Shown one piece after another: positions 6,828-63,290 of a DNA stretch of 64,000 bases. The stretch covers positions 7,564,001 to 7,628,000 of the forward strand of contig NC_043009.1 of NCBI RefSeq assembly GCF_006345805.1, read 5' to 3'. The translations under genes and the position numbers were made by a program. Every line of letters begins with the position of its first letter. The first letter of the stretch is position 1. This stretch comes from Octopus sinensis. Lineage: Eukaryota. The notes beneath the pieces were generated by a model that searched no databases, was not told the origin of the DNA, and worked only from the letters and a program-made list of their open reading frames with translations.

Positions 6828-7030
6828 AGTTAATCCAAACAAGAAAGCACAAAAAGACACAACGCGAAGACATGGAACAAATATAGTATTATTAAACGCT
6901 CAGGAAAGAAGGAAAGAAGGAGGGTCTAACGTTTCGAGCGGAGCTCTTCGTCGGAAACATAGGAGAAGGAAAGATCCAGAGAAGAGAAAACAGAGGAAAA
7001 AAAATCGCCAACGGTACACACGCGGTCACA
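6828..7030 (-). mobile_element. ~200-bp PLE-derived element, family alpha, with minimal hammerhead
   Basis: Minus strand reads gtttCCGACGA-A-GAGC-TCC-GCTC-GAAACGTT-agac (6921-6960). Homologous to 58103-58303. TA-flanked. Confidence 0.7.
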
Positions 7031-9225: not shown

Positions 9226-9270
9226 CATTATTATTATTATAATATATACATACATATATATATATATATA

Positions 9271-9680
9271 GGCGCAGGGGTGGCTGTGTGGTAAGTAGCT
9301 TGCTAACCAACCACATGGTTCCGGTTTCAGTCCCACTGCGTGGCATCTTGGGCAAGTGTCTTCTGCTATAGCCCCGGGCCGACCAATGCCTTGTGAGTGG
9401 ATTTGGTAGACGGAAACTGAAAGAAGCCTGTCGTATATATGTATATATATATGTATGTGTGTGTGTTTGTGTGTCTGTGTTTGTTCCCCTAGCATTGCTT
9501 GACAACCGATGCTGGTGTGTTTACGTCCCCGTCACTTAGCGGTTCGGCAAAAAGAGACCGATAGAATAAGTACTGGGCTTACAAAAAGAATGAGTCCCGG
9601 GGTCGAGTTGCTCGACTAAAAGGCGGTGCTCCAGCATGGCCGCAGTCAAAATGACTGAAACAAGTAAAAGAAAGAAAGAA
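9271..9680 (+). mobile_element. Full-length SINE family A (tRNA-like head, internal TA/TG tract)
   Basis: ggcgcaggggtggctgtgtggtaagtagc...ggttccggtttcagtcccactgcg...ggcggtgctccagcatggccgcagtc...gaaacaagtaaaag. Confidence 0.92.
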
Positions 9681-10506: not shown

Positions 10507-10712
10507 GGGAGAATTCCCCAAAAAACAAAAGACGAAGACAGGGTGGTGTAGACAACAAGCAGATGTATCAGTATAACGCTCGGGAATTGAAAAAGTCTTT
10601 AACGTTTCGAGCCTACGCTTTTCGTACAGAAAGGGACACAGAAACAAGGAAAGAATATAAAGGGAGAAAATAAAGAATGTGTAGTGGCTAGCGATCTATC
10701 ATGACGAAGATA
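10507..10712 (-). mobile_element. PLE-derived element, family beta, with hammerhead variant
   Basis: Minus strand reads cctttCTGTACGA-A-AAGC-GTAG-GCTC-GAAACGTT-aaagac (10595-10635). Confidence 0.7.
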
Positions 10713-12417: not shown

Positions 12418-12810
12418 GCGCAGGAGTGGTGGTGGTAAGTAACTTGTTTACCAACCAAATGGTTTCGGGTTCAGTCCCACTGCGTGGAACCTTCTAGTAT
12501 GGCCTCGGGCCGACCAAAGCCTTGTGAGTGGATTTGGTAGACGGAAACTGAAAGAAGCTCGTCGCATATATGTATATATATATATATGTGTGTGTGTGTG
12601 AGTATGTTTGTGTGTCTGTGTTTGTCTCCCTAATATCGCTTGACAACCGATGGTGGTGTGTTTACGTCCCCGTAACTTAGCAGTTCGGCGAAAATAGACT
12701 GATAGAATAAGTACTAGGCTTACAAAGAATAAGTATTTGGGTCTATATGCTCGACTAAAGGCGGTGCTCTAGCATGGCCGCAGTAAAATGACTGAAACAA
12801 GAGTAAAATA
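12418..12810 (+). mobile_element. SINE family A
   Basis: Head, internal microsatellite and tail all match the 9271 copy. Confidence 0.9.
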
Positions 12811-17196: not shown

Positions 17197-17633
17197 TTTT
17201 TACTCTCTTTCACTTGTTTTTGTCATTTGACTGCGGCCATGCTAGATCACCGCCTTTAGTCGAGTAAATCGACCCCAGGACTCATTCTTTGTAAGCCTAG
17301 TACTTACTCTATTCGTTTCTTTTGCCGAACCGCTAAGTTACGGGGGCGTAAACACAGACACACAAACATATACACACACATAGATATATACATGCATATA
17401 TACGACAGGCTTCTTTCAGTTTCTGTCTGCCAAATCCACTCACAAGGTTTTGGTCGGCCCGTGGCTATATGACAGGCTTCCTTCAGTTTCTGTCTGCCAA
17501 ATCCACTCACAAGGTTTTGGTCGGCCCGAGGCTATAGTAGAAGACACCTGCCCAAGGTGTCACGCAGTTGGGAATTTACCCGGAACCATGTGGTTGGTAA
17601 GCAACTTACTTACCACACAGCCACTCCTGCACC
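17197..17633 (-). mobile_element. SINE family A with an internal ~67-bp tandem duplication (~17404-17535)
   Basis: gacaggcttc...aaatccactcacaaggttttggtcggcccg occurs twice. Confidence 0.9.
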
Positions 17634-17873: not shown

Positions 17874-18246
17874 TACACGCGCACACTGTTATGCATGACT
17901 ATATACACAAACACATACACGTAATTACAAAACATCAGTCGGGTGAAGAGACCTCGTATCTGGCCACTCCCAAAACTCACTCTTTGTTCAGCCTCCAGAC
18001 TCATGTAAACAAAATTAAGAATATTTTAATTTCTGACATTTTTTTAACAAACACCTGACAATAATTTACACACTCATACACACACACGCACGCACTCACA
18101 TTCACTCACTTACTCACTCACGCACAGATATATATCGAAATCCCTATATACAGTGGTCAACGACTTTAGAAATGTTAGGAAGAGACTGAAAGCGTCAGAA
18201 AGTTATAATAGCAAGTATTTTCCCACTTTCTGACATTTTTCTTATA

Positions 18247-18830
18247 GGCGTAGGAGTGGCTGTGTGGTAAGTAGCTTGGTTACCAACCACATGGTTCCGG
18301 GTTCAGTCCCACTGCGTGACACCTTGGGTAAGTGTCTTCTACTGTAGCCTCGGGCTGACCAAAGCTTTGTGAGTGGATTTGGTAGACGGAAACTGAAAGA
18401 AGCCTGTCGTATATATGTACATAGCTCCTACACGCATTTTTTCCTCTCCTTGTTTTTTTCTGTGTATCTTTCTGTCGAAGAGCGTAGGCTCGAAACGTAA
18501 AAGACTTTTTCTATTACTGAGTACTATACTAATACATTTATTTGCTTGTACTCCACCTGCCTTCGTCTTTTGTTTATTTTTCGTAAACTTTCCCTTTATA
18601 TATATATATGTATGTGTGTGTATATGTTATGTTTGTGTCAGTGTTTGTCCCCCCAACATCGCTTGACAACCGATGCTGGTGTGTTTACGTCCCCGTAACA
18701 TAGCGGTTCGGCAAAAGAGTCCGATAGAATAAATTGTAAGCTTACAAAGAATAAGTCGATTTGCTCGACTAAAGGCGGTGCTCCACAGTCATTTAGACTG
18801 AAACAAATAAAAGAGTAAAAGAGTAAAGAG
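18247..18830 (+). mobile_element. SINE family A interrupted at its internal TA tract by a family-beta hammerhead element
   Basis: SINE head 18247-18415, insert 18420-18598, SINE 3' half resumes after (TA)n. Confidence 0.88.
18420..18598 (+). mobile_element. PLE-derived element, family beta, with hammerhead variant
   Basis: tctttCTGTCGA-A-GAGC-GTAG-GCTC-GAAACGTA-aaaga at 18467-18504. Confidence 0.7.
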
Positions 18831-19249: not shown

Positions 19250-19400
19250 CACGACATTTTTTTCGGGTTCCTTCTACTAAATCCACTCAGAAGGATTTGG
19301 TCGGACCAAGGCTATAGAAGAAAACACTTGCCTGAGGTACCACGGACTGGGAACGAACCGGAACTTGGGAAGCAAACTTCTTACCACAGACCCACGCCCA
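19250..19400 (-). mobile_element. SINE family A 5' fragment
   Basis: aaatccactcagaaggatttggtcggaccaaggctatag matches the family-A head region. Confidence 0.7.
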
Positions 19401-23071: not shown

Positions 23072-23204
23072 ACCGAGTACTAGATAATGTCATTGTTTCG
23101 GGAAATTAAATTATCCAGTTAATGTATTTTTTTGAAAAAACCAAAGTGAATCCCTGAATTGAGATGTGAGAAACATTGAGAGCCACAATTCCTCAACTTC
23201 ACCC

Positions 23205-23276
23205 ATTATAATCACCTGCACAAGCATCATGATCATCATCGCCATGATGATAATGATGATGATCACCATCGTCATC

Positions 23277-23326
<50 letters not shown>

Positions 23327-23414
23327 CACCATCACTATCATAATCATCATCATCATCTTCATCATCACCACCATCATCATCATCATCACCATCACCATCA
23401 TCATCACCATCATC

Positions 23415-23445
<31 letters not shown>

Positions 23446-24260
23446 CATCATCATCATCATCATCACCATCATCAACATCATCATCACCATCACCATCACC
23501 ATCATCAGCATCATCATTATCATCACTACCAGCTCCACTACCACCACCACCACCACCGCTGCCGCCGCCTCCACCACCACCGCAACCACCACTGCCAGCA
23601 CCGCCGCCGCCGCCACCACCAACACCATCAACTTCATCATTATGAGCAGCATCACTATCGCCGCCGCTCCTACAGTGTTATCCTCCACCGTCGTCATTAC
23701 CACTACCACCTTCGCCATAACCGTGAACACAGCTTCTACTGCTATCGTGACTACTCTCATCACAACCGCCATCACCACTATTAGACAAACGTGAACACCA
23801 CCATCATCCTGGCCGTCACTACCAATACCACAAACAAAATAAAACCACCACCTCAACCACCACCACAAGCACTTTAACCACCAGCTCCACCACCGCCTCC
23901 ACCACAAGGATCACCACGATCGCCACCAGCACCACTACTACAATTTGAATCACCACCATCATCACCACAAACAAAGCCACCACCTCCACGATCACCACCA
24001 CCACTACCACCACCACTCACACACACACACAACCAAAGCCGCCACCTACATACTCTACCACGATCACCACGACGACGACCACCACTACCACCACTAAAAC
24101 CACCACCACCACCACCCCTACCACCATGAAAATCTTTACCGTCACCAAAAGCACCATCACTGTTACCACTAACATCACCACCCCACCACTACCATCACAG
24201 CATCCTCTAAAATGCTTACCACATTCACACACAATCTGACCATGACCACCACCACGAATG
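23205..24260. repeat. ~1-kb degenerate (CAT)n/(CAC)n trinucleotide array
   Basis: Directly visible. Confidence 0.95.
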
Positions 24261-26479: not shown

Positions 26480-26724
26480 AATCATCATCATCATCATCAT
26501 CATCACCATCGTCATCATCATCGTCATCATCATCGTCATCATCATTGTCATCATCATCATCGTCGTCGTCGTCATCATTTTCATCATCAACATCATCGTT
26601 GTCGTCATCATCGTCATCATCATCGTCATCACCATCGTCATTATCGTCATCATCATCATCGTCGTCGTCGTAATCATTTTCATCATCAACATCATCGTTG
26701 TCGTCATCATCGTCATCGCCATCG

Positions 26725-26790
<66 letters not shown>

Positions 26791-26830
26791 GCAGCCGCAG
26801 CCGCAGCAGCAGCACCATCATCGTCATCAA
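26480..26830. repeat. (CAT)n/(CGT)n/(CAG)n array with an internal ~100-bp duplication
   Basis: Directly visible. Confidence 0.95.
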
Positions 26831-26924
26831 CAACTGCTAAATCAACAACCGTAACTATAGCAACATTGACAACGACTCAGAAAATAGCAAACCATCGACT
26901 ACAGCAAAAGACGAAAGGAAATTG

Positions 26925-27096
26925 GTAAGATCATGTGGCTATGTTGCATGAAATTTGCTTCCCAGCCACATGGTTCCGAGTTCAGTTCCACCAAATGGCA
27001 CCTTGAGCAAGTGTCTCCTGCTAGAGTCTGGGTCCTACTAAAACTCCCTTCGTGAGTGGATTTGGTAGACGGAAACTGAAAGGAGCCCGTCACACA

Positions 27097-28375: not shown

Positions 28376-28830
28376 TTACTCTTTTACTTGTTTCAGTCAT
28401 TTGACTGTGGCCATGCTGGAGCACCACCTTTAGTCAAGCAAATCGACCCCAGGACTTATTCTTTGGAAACCTAGTACTTATTCTATCGGTCTCTTTTGCC
28501 GAACATCTAAGTTACGGGGACGTAAACGCACTAGCATCGGTTGTCAAGCGATGTTGGGGGGATAAACACAGATACACAAACACAGATACACAAACATATA
28601 GACACACAAATATATAGACACACACAAAAACACACACACACACTCATATATATATATATACATATATACGACGGGCTTCTTTTTAGTTTCCGTCTACCAA
28701 ATCCACTCACAAGGCTTTTGTTGGCCCGAGGCTATAGTAGAAGACACTTGCCCAAGATGCCACGGAGAGGGACTGAACCCGGAACCATGTGGTTGGTAAG
28801 CAAGCTACTTACCACACAGCAACTCCTACA
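28376..28830 (-). mobile_element. SINE family A
   Basis: Full head and tail in reverse orientation. Confidence 0.92.
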
Positions 28831-33975: not shown

Positions 33976-34425
33976 ATCTCCATTTTTCTATGTATATATA
34001 TGAATCTGTGTGTGAGTATGTATATATATACAAAATTTAAGCTTTCTGTATCTAGTTCTGGAAATTATGTTTGTAAACGACATACTATGCTGATGATCTT
34101 GCAGATGTTCACGTGTACATATACGTGAATATTAACAAGTGAAACTGATTAGTACATAGGTAATCGTTTTTTATTTCGTATATTTTCATTTGTCTTGCTT
34201 ATTTTTTACACTTTGTTTTTTGCTGAGTTTTTTCTTGAGAACACATTCTTCGTGGAAAATAGCGATTTTGACGTCTGTATCTAGCATATTGACTGTCCAC
34301 TTTTAGTGGTCAGTCCTTTAAATTTTGTATGTAAAAAATATTTTAATCTTCGGATTTTTTTTATATGCTAGGCCACTGGTTTTAATTGATTAATATCAAT
34401 TTCTACCCTTATTCAATTTTGTGTG

Positions 34426-46205: not shown

Positions 46206-46620
46206 GCGCAGGAGTGGCTGTGTGCTAAGTAGCTTGCTTACCAACCATATGGTTCCGGGTTCAGTCCCACTGCGTGGCACCTTGGGCAAGTGTCTTCTAC
46301 TATAGCCTCGGGCTGACCAAAGCCTTGTGAGTGGATTTGGTAGATGGCAACTGAAAGAAGCCTGTTGTATATATATATGTATATGTTTGTGTGTGTATAT
46401 ATTTGTGTGTCTGTGTTTATCTCCCAAACATCGATTGACAACCGATGCTGGTTTGTTTACGTCCCTGTAACTCAGCGGTTCGGCAAAAGAGACCGATAGA
46501 ATAAGTACTAGGCTTACAAAGAATAAGTCCTGGGGTCGATTTGCTCGATTAAAGGCGGTGCTCCAGCATGGCCGCAGTCAAATGACTGAAACAAGTAAAA
46601 GAGTGAAGGAGTAAAAAGAG
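46206..46620 (+). mobile_element. SINE family A
   Basis: Full head and tail. Confidence 0.92.
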
Positions 46621-52769: not shown

Positions 52770-53207
52770 CCCAGTACTTTTGTTTTGGAATCCTGGTACT
52801 TATTCAGTCTATCTCTGTTGCCGAACTGCTAAGTTACTGGGACGTAAACACACCAGCACTGGTTGGCAAGCGGAGTGTGTGTGGGGGAAACACAGACAAA
52901 GACGCACACATATAGATACATAAATAAACACACAAACACACACACAGACACACACACAAACATGCACACGCACATAAACACACGCGTACAATCACACAGA
53001 CACACACACATATGCGTGTACACACACATATGCGTGTACACACACTTATACATACGACGGGCTTTTTTCAGTTTCTCTCAAGCAAATCCACTCACAAGGC
53101 TTTGGTCGGCCCGAGACTATAGTAGAAGACATTTGCTCGAATTTCCTTGCTGTGGGACTGAACCCGGAACCATGGAGATGGGAAGCAAGCTTCTCACTAC
53201 ACAACAT
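52770..53207 (-). mobile_element. SINE family A (diverged)
   Basis: aaatccactcacaaggctttggtcggcccgagactatag on +. Confidence 0.85.
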
Positions 53208-58102: not shown

Positions 58103-58108
<6 letters not shown>

Positions 58109-58303
58109 CCGCGTGTGTATTGTTGGCGATTTTTTCCCCTCTGTCTTCCCTGGATCTTTCCTTTTTCTATGTATCTGACGAAGAGCTCCGCTCGAAACGT
58201 TAAATCCTCCTTCTTTTTTTCCTTTCCTGAGCGTCCAATAACGCTATACTTATTCCATGTCCTCGCGTTGTCGTGTTTTCTCTTTGTTCATGTTTGGATC
58301 AAC
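58103..58303 (+). mobile_element. PLE-derived element, family alpha, with canonical-core minimal hammerhead
   Basis: gtatCTGACGA-A-GAGC-TCC-GCTC-GAAACGTT-aaat at 58171-58205. Confidence 0.72.
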
Positions 58304-58353
58304 TATATATATATATATTATATATATATATTTACATACACACACACACATAC

Positions 58354-58384
<31 letters not shown>

Positions 58385-58481
58385 ATTAAGGGCTCCTAAA
58401 TAAGGATGCCAAGTGCCAGGGACACAAAAAAGGGATAAATTTATCGAGAGTGAAAATCAAAAACATTTACCAATAACGATA

Positions 58482-58575
58482 CATCCCGGACTGATATCAG
58501 TTTCTACCTCTTTCTAGCAAAACAGACAGAATCAGACAGAATATGTTTGCTAAGGCCGGTTTCATCAGCGAGACG
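58482..58575 (-). ncRNA. Type I hammerhead ribozyme candidate (mirror copy)
   Basis: Reverse complement of 58981-59074. Confidence 0.72.
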
Positions 58576-58980
58576 CCTAAGTTAGATCGAGATGCGCAGA
58601 GCGTTAGACCATGTGTTGATCAAAACAACTTGCAAATCTTAACTTTTCAAATATCTGCGCAGAGGCAAAATCTACCTGGCGATATAGGGCATGCCGGGAA
58701 AAAATTTTACGAATAAATCTATCAAGTAATTCGTGAATATAATCAAATGGGTAATGACTAATTCGTCCTTTGTGCTGGGCCACTGGTAGTAATCTATATT
58801 ATTACCCTTTTGATTATATTCACGTATTACTTGATAGATTTATTCGTAAAATTTTTTCCCGGCATGCCCTATATCGCCAGGTAGATTTTGCCTCTACGCA
58901 GATATTTGAAAAGTTAAGATTTGCAAGTTGTTTAGATCAACACATGGTCTAACGCTCTGCGCATCTCGATCTAACTTAGG

Positions 58981-59074
58981 CGTCTCGCTGATGAAACCGG
59001 CCTTAGCAAACATATTCTGTCTGATTCTGTCTGTTTTGCTAGAAAGAGGTAGAAACTGATATCAGTCCGGGATG
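58981..59074 (+). ncRNA. Type I hammerhead ribozyme candidate
   Basis: Helix I CGTCTCG/CGGGATG (7 bp, 2 G-U); CTGATGA at 58988-58994; helix II ACC/GGT plus TAGCAAA/TTTGCTA; GAAA at 59052-59055; palindromic helix III ACTGATATCAGT; GTC triplet with predicted cut after 59067. Confidence 0.75.
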
Positions 59075-59279
59075 TATCGTTATTGGTAAATGTTTTTGAT
59101 TTTCACTCTCGATAAATTTATCCCTTTTTTGTGTCCCTAGCACTTGGCATCCTTATTTAGGAGCCCTTAATTATATTTCTACATGAATAATATTTTTCTA
59201 TATGAATAATATTTTGTCTAATGACTAATTCGTCCTTTGTGCTGGGCCACTGGTAGTAATCTATATTATTACCCTTTTG

Positions 59280-59324
<45 letters not shown>

Positions 59325-59328
<4 letters not shown>

Positions 59329-59780
59329 GACGGACTTCTTTCCGTTTCCGTCTACCAAATCCACTCACAAGGCATTGGTCGGACCGAGGGTGTACTAAAA
59401 AGAACACATGCACAAATCGTTGGGAAGGAAGCTTCTTACCACACTGCCACAACTGCGCCTATATCTGTTTGATAATATGTGTGTGTTTGTGTGTGTGTAT
59501 GTGAGCCTGCGTGTGTGTGCGTGCACATTTGTGAGTATCTGTGTCTGTGCTTGTCGCCCATCAACGCTACACAACCGGTGTTGGTGTGTTTACGTCCCCA
59601 CAATCTAGCTGTTCGGCCAAAGGGATCGATAGAATAAGTACCAGGCTTCGCGCGTGCGCGCGCACACACATACACGCAGACGCAGAAATACACACACATG
59701 CAAAATACACACACATTCGACTACAAATTCTTCGAGGTAGTGCCCTAGCATGGCCGCTGTCTAATGACTAAAAACAAAAG
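59325..59780. mobile_element. SINE family A halves in opposite orientation (5' half on - at 59325-59460, 3' half on + at ~59500-59780)
   Basis: Both halves match the 9271 copy but point in opposite directions. Confidence 0.75.
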
Positions 59781-62284: not shown

Positions 62285-62700
62285 GTTGCCGTCGTCACGA
62301 CCATCATCATCATCATCGTCATCATCACCATCATTACTACCACCATCACTACAATCACCATCATCCTACAACTACCTTCATCTCCATCATCCTCATCACA
62401 TTTCCATCATCATGATCGTCGTCGTCGTCCTCCACGTCCTCTTCCTCATTATCATCATCATCATCATCATAATCATTCTCCTCCTCCTCCTCCTCCTCCT
62501 CCTCATCATCATCATCATCATCATCATCTTCGACGTTACCATTACAGCCACAATCATCATGGTCATCAACATCAACCTTACTTCCACGACCATGACCAAT
62601 GCCACGACAACCACTGCCGCCGCCGCCGCCACCGACGCCGCCGTCACCACCACCACCGCCTCCTCCACCGCCACATTCCTCCTCCTCATCAACAATGTTT
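62285..62700. repeat. Degenerate (CAT)/(CCT)/(CAC)/(CGC) trinucleotide array
   Basis: Directly visible. Confidence 0.95.
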
Positions 62701-63159
62701 GGTTGAAAGTTGAGCATGAGTGCGCCTGTGTGTGAATAATATTGGACCGTAAGTATGAAACGTCGGGGAAAGTTTCACCCAGCTTCACCGTAAAAGACGG
62801 ATACCTGTCATATTTTCGTAGAGATTTAATATGGACAGCCAAAGTAAATTTATTTCTAACTACTCCTCGCGACCCCACCGCCATCTGTTACCGACGTCTC
62901 TTTCTCTGAAAGGACACAAGAGCATTAATTAACAGAATCAAGCATCGTACTCACAGACGTGTCTATTTAGAAAAGTTCATCTGAAGAATTTTGGCTGCTT
63001 AGCGAAATTTTTAACAGACGTGTCATTAAATCGTGATTGACAGTCGAAAATTTAACAATAAAAAGAAAAAAGAAAACGAAATATTCTGAAATATCTAAGT
63101 ATATTGAATCTAGATATACTGTGGCGGCTGTGTATAGGCGTAAGTGTGAGTGTGGTAAG

Positions 63160-63290
63160 AAATTTTCTTCTCAGCCGCATGGTTCCGGGTTCAGTCCCAC
63201 TGTGTGGCATCATGGGCAAATGTCTTTTGCTATAGCCCCAGGCTGACCAAAGCCTTGTGTGTGGATTTGCTAGACGGAAACTGAAACTGT
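63160..63290 (+). mobile_element. SINE family A 5' half
   Basis: ggttccgggttcagtcccactgtgtggcatcatgggcaaatgtc. Confidence 0.8.

What the first reader, a model, noticed from the sequence alone, without database searches (positions are those of the whole stretch)
58380..59282. 376-bp palindrome carrying a well-formed hammerhead on each strand, with a 467-bp tandem period
Seen in sequence: near-perfect inverted arms (five mismatches seen) around a 45-bp spacer. The spacer and its flanks reappear 467 bp downstream, giving the layout inverted copy / full monomer / truncated second monomer. Each arm folds as a type I hammerhead with a 7-bp helix I, CUGAUGA, a long bipartite helix II, GAAA, a 12-nt palindromic helix III and a GUC site. 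There is an unpaired A on each side between the core and helix II. Established knowledge: Penelope-like elements have hammerhead-bearing pseudo-LTRs in tandem and inverted arrangements, and retrozymes are non-coding hammerhead monomers that can circularise. Inference: this is a young, non-coding, retrozyme-like 467-nt unit that self-cleaves from either transcription direction and could also form ~370-bp dsRNA.
Basis: partly seen in the sequence, partly recalled or inferred. Interest (0 to 1): 0.88.

Follow-up and report, generated by a model that had tools for sequence, protein, structure and literature searches.

The report
Palindromic hammerhead-bearing retroelement insertion
A 0.9-kb non-coding mobile-element insertion, built from one inverted and 1.14 direct copies of a 467-nt unit with a hammerhead-ribozyme-like motif, splits the TA-repeat tail of a SINE; it looks like a tidy footprint of Penelope-like/retrozyme retrotransposition, a known kind of element, not a new system.

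Summary
The arms are 58380-58755 and 58801-59176, with five mismatches and a 45-nt spacer. A 64-nt exact repeat at +467 defines the unit. Each arm can be drawn as a type I hammerhead that would cut after 59067 (+) or 58489 (-).

The hammerhead is sub-threshold:
- Rfam Hammerhead_1 aligns end to end, but at 17.3 bits against a gathering score of 34.
- G10.1-C11.1 is replaced by A.A.
- The fold is about 4-5 kcal/mol above the MFE.
- Covariation could not be tested, because no other copy was reachable.

The new result is context. The 897-nt composite is one discrete insertion into the (CA)n-(CATA)n-(TA)n tail of a SINE-like repeat. The whole composite is reproduced as rc(M453-828)+M871-1401 of a multimer of one unit, joined at a 4-nt microhomology.

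A partial tandem, an adjacent inverted copy and a microsatellite target are together the published hallmark of Penelope-like element insertions. Hammerhead pairs on opposite strands are also reported for them.

Each strand has only one hammerhead, so this locus cannot release a monomer. In a read-through transcript the palindrome sequesters the ribozyme completely.

Verdict: a probable non-autonomous, PLE-mobilised, retrozyme-like element. It is a new member of a known kind, of moderate-to-low interest.

The parts
58304..58385 (.). Left half of the interrupted SINE-tail microsatellite: (TA)n, then (CA)n-(CATA)n-(TA)n ending at the insertion
   Evidence: The same (CA)n-(CATA)n-(TA)n order precedes the body of all 10 inspected SINE-like copies.
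58380..58755 (-). Inverted copy of the unit (E453-E467 followed by E1-E361, so it crosses a unit junction); left arm of the palindrome
   Evidence: Reconstructed as rc(M453-M828) of a synthetic multimer with only the five arm mismatches.
58481..58576 (-). Hammerhead-like motif of the inverted copy (C3 = 58568; predicted cut after C17 = 58489)
   Evidence: Descriptor scan. Sequence identical to the plus-strand motif.
58752..58755 (.). TAAT microhomology shared by the 5' ends of the inverted and direct copies (the inversion junction)
   Evidence: The composite length of 903 nt is reproduced only with a 4-nt overlap.
58752..58815 (+). Upstream partial unit (E404-E467), identical to the 3'-terminal 64 nt. 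This is the pLTR-like partial tandem; its part 58756-58800 is the 45-nt 'spacer' of the palindrome
   Evidence: 64/64 identity to 59219-59282.
58816..59282 (+). One full 467-nt unit (E1-E467), 36% GC, non-coding
58980..59075 (+). Hammerhead type I-like motif: helix I 58980-87/59068-75, core 58988-94, A.A at 58995/59051, helix II 58996-59050, GAA 59052-54, palindromic helix III 59055-66, C17 59067
   Evidence: Rfam Hammerhead_1 positions 1-45/45, 17.3 bits, E 0.07 in a 121-nt search. Descriptor hit rate 24/5151 shuffles. Energy -18.3 to -19.7 against MFE -23.6 kcal/mol.
59177..59218 (+). 42-nt AT-rich segment (E362-E403) present in the direct copy only. It is the stretch 'lost' between the two primed cDNAs, and is part of a 19-nt x3 internal tandem repeat
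59219..59282 (+). 3'-terminal 64 nt of the direct copy (E404-E467), ending ...TACCCTTTTGATT against the (TA)n
59283..59325 (.). Right half of the interrupted SINE-tail microsatellite, (TA)21
59326..59470 (-). Body of a SINE-like repeat (at least 12 copies in the window) whose tail received the insertion
33976..34414 (+). Locus B: a possible diverged, 5'-truncated single copy of a related element. It has a hammerhead-like motif at 34085-34160 with U.U at the base of helix II, the box GCTAGGCCACTGGTTTTAAT at 34367-86, and TACCCTT followed by a microsatellite
   Evidence: For: descriptor hit; top non-self hit of a covariance model built from locus A only, 12.9 bits, E 0.21; the only 17/20 match to the box in the window. 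Against: whole-unit similarity is not above background, and there is no Rfam hammerhead hit.

Best explanation
The region is a single retrotransposition product of a short (467-nt), non-coding, hammerhead-bearing element of the Penelope-like-element (PLE)/non-LTR-retrozyme kind. It is mobilised in trans, because it has no ORF.

Shown:
- The 897-nt composite interrupts the (TA)n part of the stereotyped microsatellite tail of a SINE-like repeat.
- It consists of an inverted copy plus 1.14 direct copies of one unit.
- Both copies cross a unit-unit junction.
- The whole composite equals rc(M453-828)+M871-1401 of a multimer of the unit, joined through a 4-nt TAAT microhomology.

Inferred:
- A multimeric, uncleaved transcript or a circular RNA of the element was reverse-transcribed at a nicked TA microsatellite by a PLE RT/GIY-YIG enzyme.
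- One target 3' end primed at the AUAU that follows E467 and gave the direct copy.
- The other target end primed 42 nt upstream of where that cDNA stopped, at the UAUAU of E357-361, and gave the inverted copy. This is twin priming.
- The two 5' ends were then joined by microhomology. On this reading the palindrome is a by-product of integration, not a designed structure.
- In master copies, which would be tandem arrays elsewhere in the genome, the hammerhead would process multimeric RNA. It would probably act as a dimer through its 12-nt palindromic helix III.
- At this locus it cannot release a unit, since there is one ribozyme per strand. In read-through RNA it is buried in a 376-bp hairpin. 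If transcribed, that hairpin would be a Dicer-type dsRNA substrate.
For: Discrete insertion:
- All 10 inspected copies of the flanking SINE-like repeat carry (CA)n-(CATA)n-(TA)n directly before TACGAC....
- Here the same series is split, with 58335-58385 on the left and (TA)21|CACGACGG on the right.
- Pure (TA)n tracts of 12 nt or more cover only 3.7% of the window.

Architecture:
- The anatomy comes, and the exact reconstruction.
- The same paper reports a microsatellite bias, with (TA)n for Naiads.
- It also describes non-autonomous derivatives that make pLTRs and head-to-tail insertions.

Hammerhead:
- All invariant core positions are present, and Rfam Hammerhead_1 aligns end to end.
- Chance expectation is about 0.005 per 64 kb.

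Published PLE-hammerhead traits found here (PMC4209133):
- a large helix II
- an extra nucleotide after A9
- a palindromic helix III
- 'dual min-HHRs... ~100-700 bp [apart] but in opposite strands'; the two C17 sites here are 578 nt apart

Other support:
- A mismatch at the base of helix II (U.U) exists in the axolotl retrozyme ribozyme HHR_Amex2, which cleaves best as a dimer (PMC7229834).
- The dimer fold forms the intermolecular helix III.
- Unit properties fit metazoan retrozymes: 36% GC, non-coding, a few hundred nt.
- Animal retrozymes are reported to derive from PLE pLTRs (bioRxiv 10.64898/2026.07.22.740005).
Against: - No RT/GIY-YIG ORF was found. The 10 longest ORFs of the window gave no Pfam hit, and all ORFs of 150 aa or more are microsatellite translations. 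The mobilising enzyme is therefore assumed.
- No second clear copy exists in the window, and none could be fetched from any collection. Family status, unit length and hammerhead conservation all rest on this one locus plus the marginal locus B.
- The hammerhead scores half the Rfam gathering score, lacks G10.1-C11.1, and is 4-5 kcal/mol above the MFE. The 467-nt unit is not unusually structured (z = -1.28).
- The reported (TA)n preference is for Naiads, which lack hammerheads.
- The twin-priming geometry is only weakly diagnostic. Taking the gap modulo 467 as uniform, I estimate (no tool run) that a gap of 42 nt or less has a chance probability of roughly 0.1-0.2. The right-hand microhomology is imperfect (GATTtTAT against GATTaTAT).
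- The host organism was not identified.
Confidence: 0.6

Rival explanations
1. Two-step origin. A simple 531-nt insertion (58752-59282) of the element was followed later by a local inverted duplication of 376 bp, through replication template switching or fold-back repair. The palindrome would then say nothing about the integration mechanism.
For: Microhomology-mediated inverted duplications occur in all genomes. The 4-nt TAAT junction fits template switching as well as twin priming. The adjacency argument for one event is weak (p about 0.1-0.2).
Against: The outer end of the inverted copy abuts the other half of the same SINE-tail (TA)n, and it ends in a TATAT run of the unit, as expected for priming on the target. 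A later local duplication would not be expected to end exactly at the insertion boundary. The published PLE architecture predicts this layout in one step.
Confidence: 0.14
2. The hammerhead resemblance is a chance match or an inactive relic. The element would be some other short repeat, or unique DNA, whose palindromic arrangement has nothing to do with ribozymes.
For: - The Rfam score is 17.3 against a gathering score of 34, seen only when 121 nt are searched.
- A.A replaces the conserved G10.1-C11.1.
- The fold is not the MFE, and the z-score is 0.04.
- At about 0.005 chance hits per 64 kb, a Gb genome would hold hundreds.
- PLE hammerheads themselves cleave poorly in vitro.
Against: - Within the 376-nt arm the chance expectation is about 3e-5 by my descriptor. 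This is my scaling of the rate.
- The motif co-occurs with the tandem plus inverted insertion architecture and microsatellite targeting described for PLEs, which also carry hammerheads.
- The best non-self hit of a model built from this motif alone is locus B, which is also followed by a matching 20-mer box.
Confidence: 0.15
3. A foldback or MITE-type DNA transposon with 376-bp terminal inverted repeats and a 45-bp loop, inserted at a TA or TTAA site.
For: The arms end in TTAAGGGCTCC.../...GGAGCCCTTAA next to TA repeats. The arms are long and nearly perfect, the spacer is short, and the size is under 1 kb.
Against: - The insertion into the SINE tail is 897 nt, not the 797-nt palindrome. The extra 106 nt (59177-59282) includes an exact 64-nt repeat of the element's own centre, which a MITE does not explain.
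- The termini GGG...CCC after TTAA are the reverse of the piggyBac CCC...GGG ends (from my own knowledge, not tested).
- No transposase remnant was found.
Confidence: 0.06
4. Assembly artefact: a fold-back chimeric long read or mis-join created the left arm.
For: PMC8557442 notes that such tandem/inverted PLE structures often cause assembly problems. No reads are available here.
Against: - The palindromy stops at defined points and does not extend into the flanks.
- The left flank continues the SINE tail series expected from paralogous copies.
- The arms differ at five positions.
- The 45-nt spacer is element sequence that recurs at 59223-59267. It does not match the long-read hairpin-adapter sequence as I recall it, which is memory rather than a test.
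Confidence: 0.05

Closest known systems
Metazoan non-LTR retrozymes (Cervera & de la Pena 2020, PMC7229834; Li et al. 2026 preprint 10.64898/2026.07.22.740005)
   Same: A short, non-coding, low-GC unit of a few hundred nt carrying a type I hammerhead. There is a head-to-tail junction between units. Mobilisation by PLEs through multimeric or circular RNA is inferred. Natural relatives include ribozymes with a mismatch at the base of helix II that work as dimers.
   Different: Only 1.14 direct units are present here, whereas retrozymes are described as dimers up to large multimers. The 467-nt unit is slightly above the reported 150-450 bp. Circular RNA and copy number are untested. An inverted copy is attached. 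The hammerhead has A.A at 10.1/11.1 and a 57-nt helix II.
Penelope-like element insertions with pseudo-LTRs (Evgen'ev & Arkhipova 2005; Craig et al. 2021, PMC8557442)
   Same: A partial tandem forms a pLTR-like repeat. An inverted truncated copy lies immediately at the 5' end. The insertion is in a microsatellite. A hammerhead lies in the repeated part. Non-autonomous derivatives are known.
   Different: There is no RT/GIY-YIG ORF in the element or elsewhere in the window. The unit is 467 nt rather than 2.5-4 kb. The reported (TA)n bias is for Naiads, which lack hammerheads.
PLE-type minimal hammerheads (Cervera & de la Pena 2014, PMC4209133; Lunse et al. 2017)
   Same: Type I topology, an enlarged helix II, an extra nucleotide after A9, a palindromic helix III suited to dimer formation, and pairs of motifs on opposite strands 100-700 bp apart.
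   Different: G10.1-C11.1 is not present. There is a second unpaired A on the 3' side. Helix I is long (8 bp) rather than 4-5 bp. Helix III is a full 4-bp stem with a tetraloop rather than 0-2 bp.
L1 5'-inversions by twin priming (Ostertag & Kazazian 2001; from my own knowledge, not read here)
   Same: The 5' part of the insertion is inverted and the 3' part is direct. The two parts are adjacent on the template with a small loss (42 nt). There is microhomology at the inversion junction, and the inverted part is primed internally.
   Different: The template here is multimeric or circular, so the two parts overlap in sequence and make a long palindrome. The enzyme would be a PLE RT/GIY-YIG rather than L1 ORF2p. 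Priming is on a TA microsatellite rather than poly(A).

Membership tests
Hammerhead ribozyme, type I (Rfam RF00163) | Invariant core C3-U4-G5-A6-N7-G8-A9, G12-A13-A14, A15.1-U16.1, H17 | tested here: met
   CUGAUGA at 58988-94, GAA at 59052-54, A59055-U59066, C59067.
Hammerhead ribozyme, type I (Rfam RF00163) | Three helices around the core, with helix I open | tested here: met
   Helix I is 8 bp, helix II is 3+9 bp, helix III is 4 bp plus a tetraloop. These are drawable pairings, but they are not the MFE (-18.3 to -19.7 against -23.6 kcal/mol).
Hammerhead ribozyme, type I (Rfam RF00163) | G10.1-C11.1 pair closing helix II | tested here: not met
   A58995 and A59051 are opposed, flagged non-canonical by cmscan. 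The next pair is A-U.
Hammerhead ribozyme, type I (Rfam RF00163) | Score at or above the curated gathering threshold | tested here: not met
   17.3 bits against 34. There was no hit at gathering score, nor at E<=10 in 1.1 kb.
Hammerhead ribozyme, type I (Rfam RF00163) | Compensatory changes in helices among homologues | tested here: inconclusive
   The two arms are identical in the motif. No other copies were retrievable. Locus B keeps the pairing with different bases, but it was found with a descriptor that requires pairing.
Hammerhead ribozyme, type I (Rfam RF00163) | Mg2+-dependent self-cleavage 3' of H17 | not testable with these tools
   Needs in vitro transcription.
PLE-type hammerhead (PMC4209133) | Enlarged helix II and an extra nucleotide between A9 and 10.1 | tested here: met
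   Helix II spans 57 nt. A58995 follows A9.
PLE-type hammerhead (PMC4209133) | Palindromic 15.2-16.2 and loop 3, allowing a dimeric helix III | tested here: met
   ACUGAUAUCAGU is a perfect 12-nt palindrome. The co-fold of two copies forms the intermolecular helix.
PLE-type hammerhead (PMC4209133) | Located in the pLTRs of an RT + GIY-YIG element | tested here: not met
   No coding capacity in the unit. No Pfam domain in the window's 10 longest ORFs. The wider genome was not searchable.
Non-LTR retrozyme (PMC7229834) | Tandem repeats of 150-450 bp, from dimers to multimers, each with a hammerhead | tested here: not met
   Only 1.14 direct units with one hammerhead per strand. The unit is 467 nt. 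Source arrays may exist elsewhere.
Non-LTR retrozyme (PMC7229834) | Low GC, non-coding, no LTR/PBS/PPT | tested here: met
   35.8% GC and a longest stop-free run of 64 codons. PBS and PPT were not specifically looked for.
Non-LTR retrozyme (PMC7229834) | Expressed as linear and circular RNA of unit length | not testable with these tools
   No transcriptome data.
PLE-type insertion architecture (PMC8557442) | Partial tandem (pLTR) plus an inverted truncated copy adjacent to the 5' end | tested here: met
   Description of the family.
PLE-type insertion architecture (PMC8557442) | Insertion into a microsatellite | tested here: met
   The insertion splits the (TA)n of a SINE tail. Description.
PLE-type insertion architecture (PMC8557442) | 30-40-bp 'tail' extension at one end | tested here: inconclusive
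   A 42-nt segment (59177-59218) is present on one side only. It is equally explained as ordinary unit sequence.

The most novel reading that the evidence does not exclude
The unit founds an undescribed retrozyme family in this (unidentified, possibly cephalopod) genome. Its hammerhead is catalytically active despite an A.A (or doubly bulged) junction in place of G10.1-C11.1 and a 57-nt bipartite helix II. The locus is also a clean natural snapshot showing that the long-unexplained tandem/inverted PLE insertion structures arise by twin priming on a multimeric or circular RNA at microsatellite targets. The resulting palindrome could in addition act as a hairpin-RNA source that silences the family.
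Probability: 0.2. Interest if true: 0.55.

Novelty: new member of a known kind. Interest (0 to 1): 0.35.

Why it matters
Hammerhead-bearing retroelements (PLEs and animal retrozymes) are known but poorly annotated, and the source of their tandem/inverted insertion structures is described as still undefined (PMC8557442).

This locus is unusually legible. It is a young insertion with a recognisable pre-insertion site, a SINE tail, and both junctions can be read to the nucleotide. It fits a twin-priming model on a template of more than two units.

If the same geometry recurs in other copies, it would give a concrete and testable mechanism for PLE integration. It would also add a hammerhead variant with a non-canonical 10.1/11.1 junction.

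As a single locus, it is mainly a good annotation: an ordinary mobile-element footprint rather than a functional bidirectional ribozyme gene.

Tried and rejected
1. Rfam at gathering score on the whole window gave nothing. A permissive 1.1-kb search gave no hammerhead either. It gave only a sub-threshold MIR8562 hit (102 against 211 bits) on both strands, which is a generic long-hairpin effect.
2. I looked for other copies and found none:
   - blastn in the window found only the locus itself.
   - Pattern scans of metagenome contigs (x2), genome contigs (x2) and viral contigs (x1) gave 0 hits. These collections hold no animal genomes.
   - Exact look-up of 8 element-internal ORFs found none indexed.
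   - A homology search with the 60-aa internal ORF found no candidates.
3. Host identification failed. A homology search with a SINE-derived peptide gave no candidates, a full-text search for a SINE 17-mer found 0 papers, and there are no tRNA genes.
4. I found no linked RT/GIY-YIG. There was no Pfam hit on the 10 longest ORFs, and every ORF of 150 aa or more is a microsatellite translation.
5. A hammerhead-like string, CTGACGAAGAGCTCCGCTCGAAAC at 58174-58197, was rejected. It has no Rfam hammerhead hit and no helix I. In the paralogous copy the CUGA is CCGA.
6. The MAFFT alignment of the two hammerhead-like sites mis-registered, so no pair counting was done on it.
7. Whole-unit homology of locus B to locus A is not above the AT-rich background.
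8. The MITE/foldback reading and the assembly-artefact reading were rejected for the reasons given under the rival explanations.
Full report
**1. What is there**

The sequence between 58380 and 59282 contains a near-perfect inverted repeat. The repeat finder reports arms of 389 nt, 97% complementary, with 45 nt between them. After trimming the TA-rich ends, the arms are 58380-58755 and 58801-59176 (376 nt), and they differ at exactly five positions.

A direct repeat lies 467 nt downstream. Positions 58752-58815 equal 59219-59282 exactly over 64 nt, or 98.5% over 68 nt. No other copy is detectable in the window by blastn with word size 7.

The unit is 36% GC and has no stop-free run longer than 64 codons. 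Its RNA is not unusually structured (z = -1.28).

**2. The hammerhead**

- helix I: 58980-87 with 59068-75
- core: CUGAUGA at 58988-94
- an unpaired A on each side of helix II (58995 and 59051)
- a bipartite helix II
- GAA at 59052-54
- the palindrome ACUGAUAUCAGU at 59055-66
- C17 at 59067

The mirror copy on the minus strand has C17 at 58489.

The statistics favour a real motif locally. A descriptor loose enough to accept this motif found something as good in only 24 of 5151 dinucleotide-preserving shuffles of the window. Rfam's Hammerhead_1 model aligns over its full length when only 121 nt are searched (17.3 bits, E = 0.07 over 4227 families).

The motif is nevertheless sub-threshold by every curated measure:
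- Nothing reaches the gathering score of 34 bits.
- Nothing appears at E<=10 in a 1.1-kb search.
- The G10.1-C11.1 pair is replaced by A.A.
- The hammerhead fold scores -18.3 to -19.7 kcal/mol against an MFE of -23.6. The segment folds no better than shuffles (z = 0.04).

The deviations do have precedents in the relevant families:
- PLE hammerheads typically have a large helix II, an extra nucleotide after A9 and a palindromic helix III, and they cleave poorly except as dimers (PMC4209133).
- The axolotl retrozyme ribozyme HHR_Amex2 has a U.U mismatch at the base of helix II (PMC7229834).
- A co-fold of two copies does form the 12-bp intermolecular helix III.

**3. Context: one discrete insertion**

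The right flank (59326-59470) belongs to a SINE-like family with at least 12 copies in the window. All ten copies I inspected are preceded at the same end by the same microsatellite series, (CA)n-(CATA)n-(TA)n|TACGAC....

At the finding this series is split. (CA)n-(CATA)n-(TA)n ends at 58385, and (TA)21|CACGACGG resumes at 59283. The 897 nt in between are therefore one insertion into a pre-existing TA microsatellite. Pure (TA)n tracts of 12 nt or more make up only 3.7% of the window.

This argues against an in-situ decaying satellite array and against an assembly fold-back.

**4. Anatomy of the insertion**

Number the right-hand full unit E1-E467 (58816-59282).
- The direct copy is E404-E467 followed by E1-E467, 531 nt in all.
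- The inverted copy is E453-E467 followed by E1-E361, 376 nt in all.

Both copies cross a unit-unit junction, so the template held more than one unit or was circular.

On a synthetic trimer M of the unit, the composite equals rc(M453-M828)+M871-M1401 with a 4-nt TAAT overlap. The length is 903 nt, and the only differences are the five arm mismatches.

On the template the two copied stretches are adjacent. They are separated by 42 nt (E362-E403) and together span 949 nt, or 2.03 units.

Both outer ends lie at AU runs of the template. The inverted copy ends in TATAT (E357-361), and the direct copy ends just before ATAT (E1-4). Only 3.2% of unit positions are followed by such a run.

This is the geometry of twin priming: two target 3' ends in the TA tract prime on one RNA, and the two cDNAs are joined by microhomology. 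I regard it as the best reading, but the support is modest. I estimate (no tool run) that adjacency within about 50 nt has a chance probability of roughly 0.1-0.2. The right-hand microhomology is imperfect, and this is a single case.

**5. Comparison with known systems**

PMC8557442 describes PLE insertions as follows:
- partial tandems forming pLTRs
- a bias for microsatellites, with (TA)n for Naiads
- non-autonomous derivatives that make pLTRs and head-to-tail insertions

PMC4209133 reports hammerhead pairs 100-700 bp apart on opposite strands. Here the two cleavage sites are 578 nt apart. Animal retrozymes are short, low-GC, non-coding tandem units with type I hammerheads, and they are thought to be PLE derivatives.

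The locus therefore works like a PLE-mobilised, retrozyme-like element. Strict membership fails on some tested features:
- There is no RT/GIY-YIG in the window.
- There is no multimeric array here.
- There is no G10.1-C11.1 pair.
- The Rfam score is below threshold.

**6. What it can and cannot do**

Each strand carries one hammerhead, so this locus cannot excise a 467-nt monomer or circle.

In a read-through plus-strand RNA the MFE is -700.9 kcal/mol, and all 96 hammerhead nucleotides pair with the other arm. The ribozyme's complement is transcribed first, so the hairpin should win. 'Self-cleaves from either direction' is therefore unlikely, except for transcripts that start inside the element.

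The dsRNA potential is real if the locus is transcribed, but I could not test this.

Both hammerhead sites inside the copied template were intact. That fits an inefficient ribozyme, a religated circle, or rolling-circle copying, and I cannot tell which.

**7. A possible relative**

Locus B (33976-34414, plus strand) is also bounded by microsatellites. The evidence for a relationship:
- It carries a weaker hammerhead-like motif with U.U at the base of helix II.
- It is the top non-self hit of a covariance model built only from locus A and run with filters off, at 12.9 bits and E = 0.21.
- About 210 nt downstream, in the same order as in A, lies the only 17/20 match in the window to A's box GCTGGGCCACTGGTAGTAAT, followed by TACCCTT and a microsatellite.

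The evidence against:
- Whole-unit similarity is not above background.
- Rfam sees no hammerhead there.

I rate B as roughly even odds to be a diverged family member.

**8. Limits**

None of the searchable collections holds animal genomes, and every route to further copies failed. The decisive tests are copy number, core conservation, helix covariation and a linked PLE, and none could be run.

The host was not identified.

If the host is an octopus, the calibration in PMC13282606 (JC 0.09 is about 25 My) would date the 1.3% arm divergence to roughly 2 My.

**9. Verdict**

The most likely identity is a young, non-autonomous, hammerhead-bearing PLE/retrozyme-type insertion whose palindrome is a by-product of integration. 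It is a new member of a known kind.

Interest is moderate-to-low. The main value is a clean single-locus model for how tandem/inverted PLE insertions arise.

Noticed in passing
window 59326-59470 (-); other copies near 9266-9434, 12492-12564, 17402-17555, 18243-18410, 19250-19388, 27028-27091, 28668-28823, 46282-46368, 53054-53115, 63133-63286: An abundant SINE-like repeat with at least 12 copies in 64 kb. Its body (…CTTGTGAGTGGATTTGGTAGACGGAAAC… in sense) is always followed by a stereotyped (TA)n-(TATG)n-(TG)n tail. This family probably seeds much of the window's microsatellite content. ARAGORN finds no tRNA in the window.
   Followed up: partly
window 33976-34414 (+): Locus B is a microsatellite-bounded block with a weaker hammerhead-like motif (C3 = 34090, H17 = 34154, U.U at the base of helix II) and a 17/20 match to the finding's 3' box. 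It may be a diverged, 5'-truncated relative of the element. The similarity is not significant overall.
   Followed up: partly
window 58108-58303 (+), paralogue at 6829-7026 (-), fragment at 10598-10654 (-): A further repeat family lies immediately left of the SINE tail. It contains a hammerhead-core-like string, CTGACGAAGAGCTCCGCTCGAAAC. The CUGA is not conserved in the paralogue (CCGA), there is no helix I and no Rfam hit, so it is not a ribozyme.
   Followed up: yes
window 58644-58912, both strands: A sub-threshold Rfam hit to the plant-type long-hairpin miRNA family MIR8562 (102 bits against a gathering score of 211, E about 2e-19). It is a generic consequence of the perfect hairpin and not evidence for a miRNA gene.
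   Followed up: yes
window 59172-59229: A 19-nt motif (TATTTTTCTAATGAATAA-like) is repeated about 3 times in tandem inside the unit. It spans the segment that is missing from the inverted copy.
   Followed up: no
window 23166-23907, 26500-26854, 62302-62674: Long trinucleotide and hexanucleotide repeats ((CAT)n, CCACCG-type) give spurious ORFs rich in His, Gln, Pro or Ile. Every ORF of 150 aa or more in the window is of this kind, and no protein-coding gene was recognised.
   Followed up: partly
window 58808/58748, 58825/58731, 58934/58622: Three of the five differences between the arms are A<->T transversions. This is an unusual spectrum for neutral decay. It could reflect reverse-transcriptase errors at the time of insertion, but the numbers are too small to test.
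   Followed up: no
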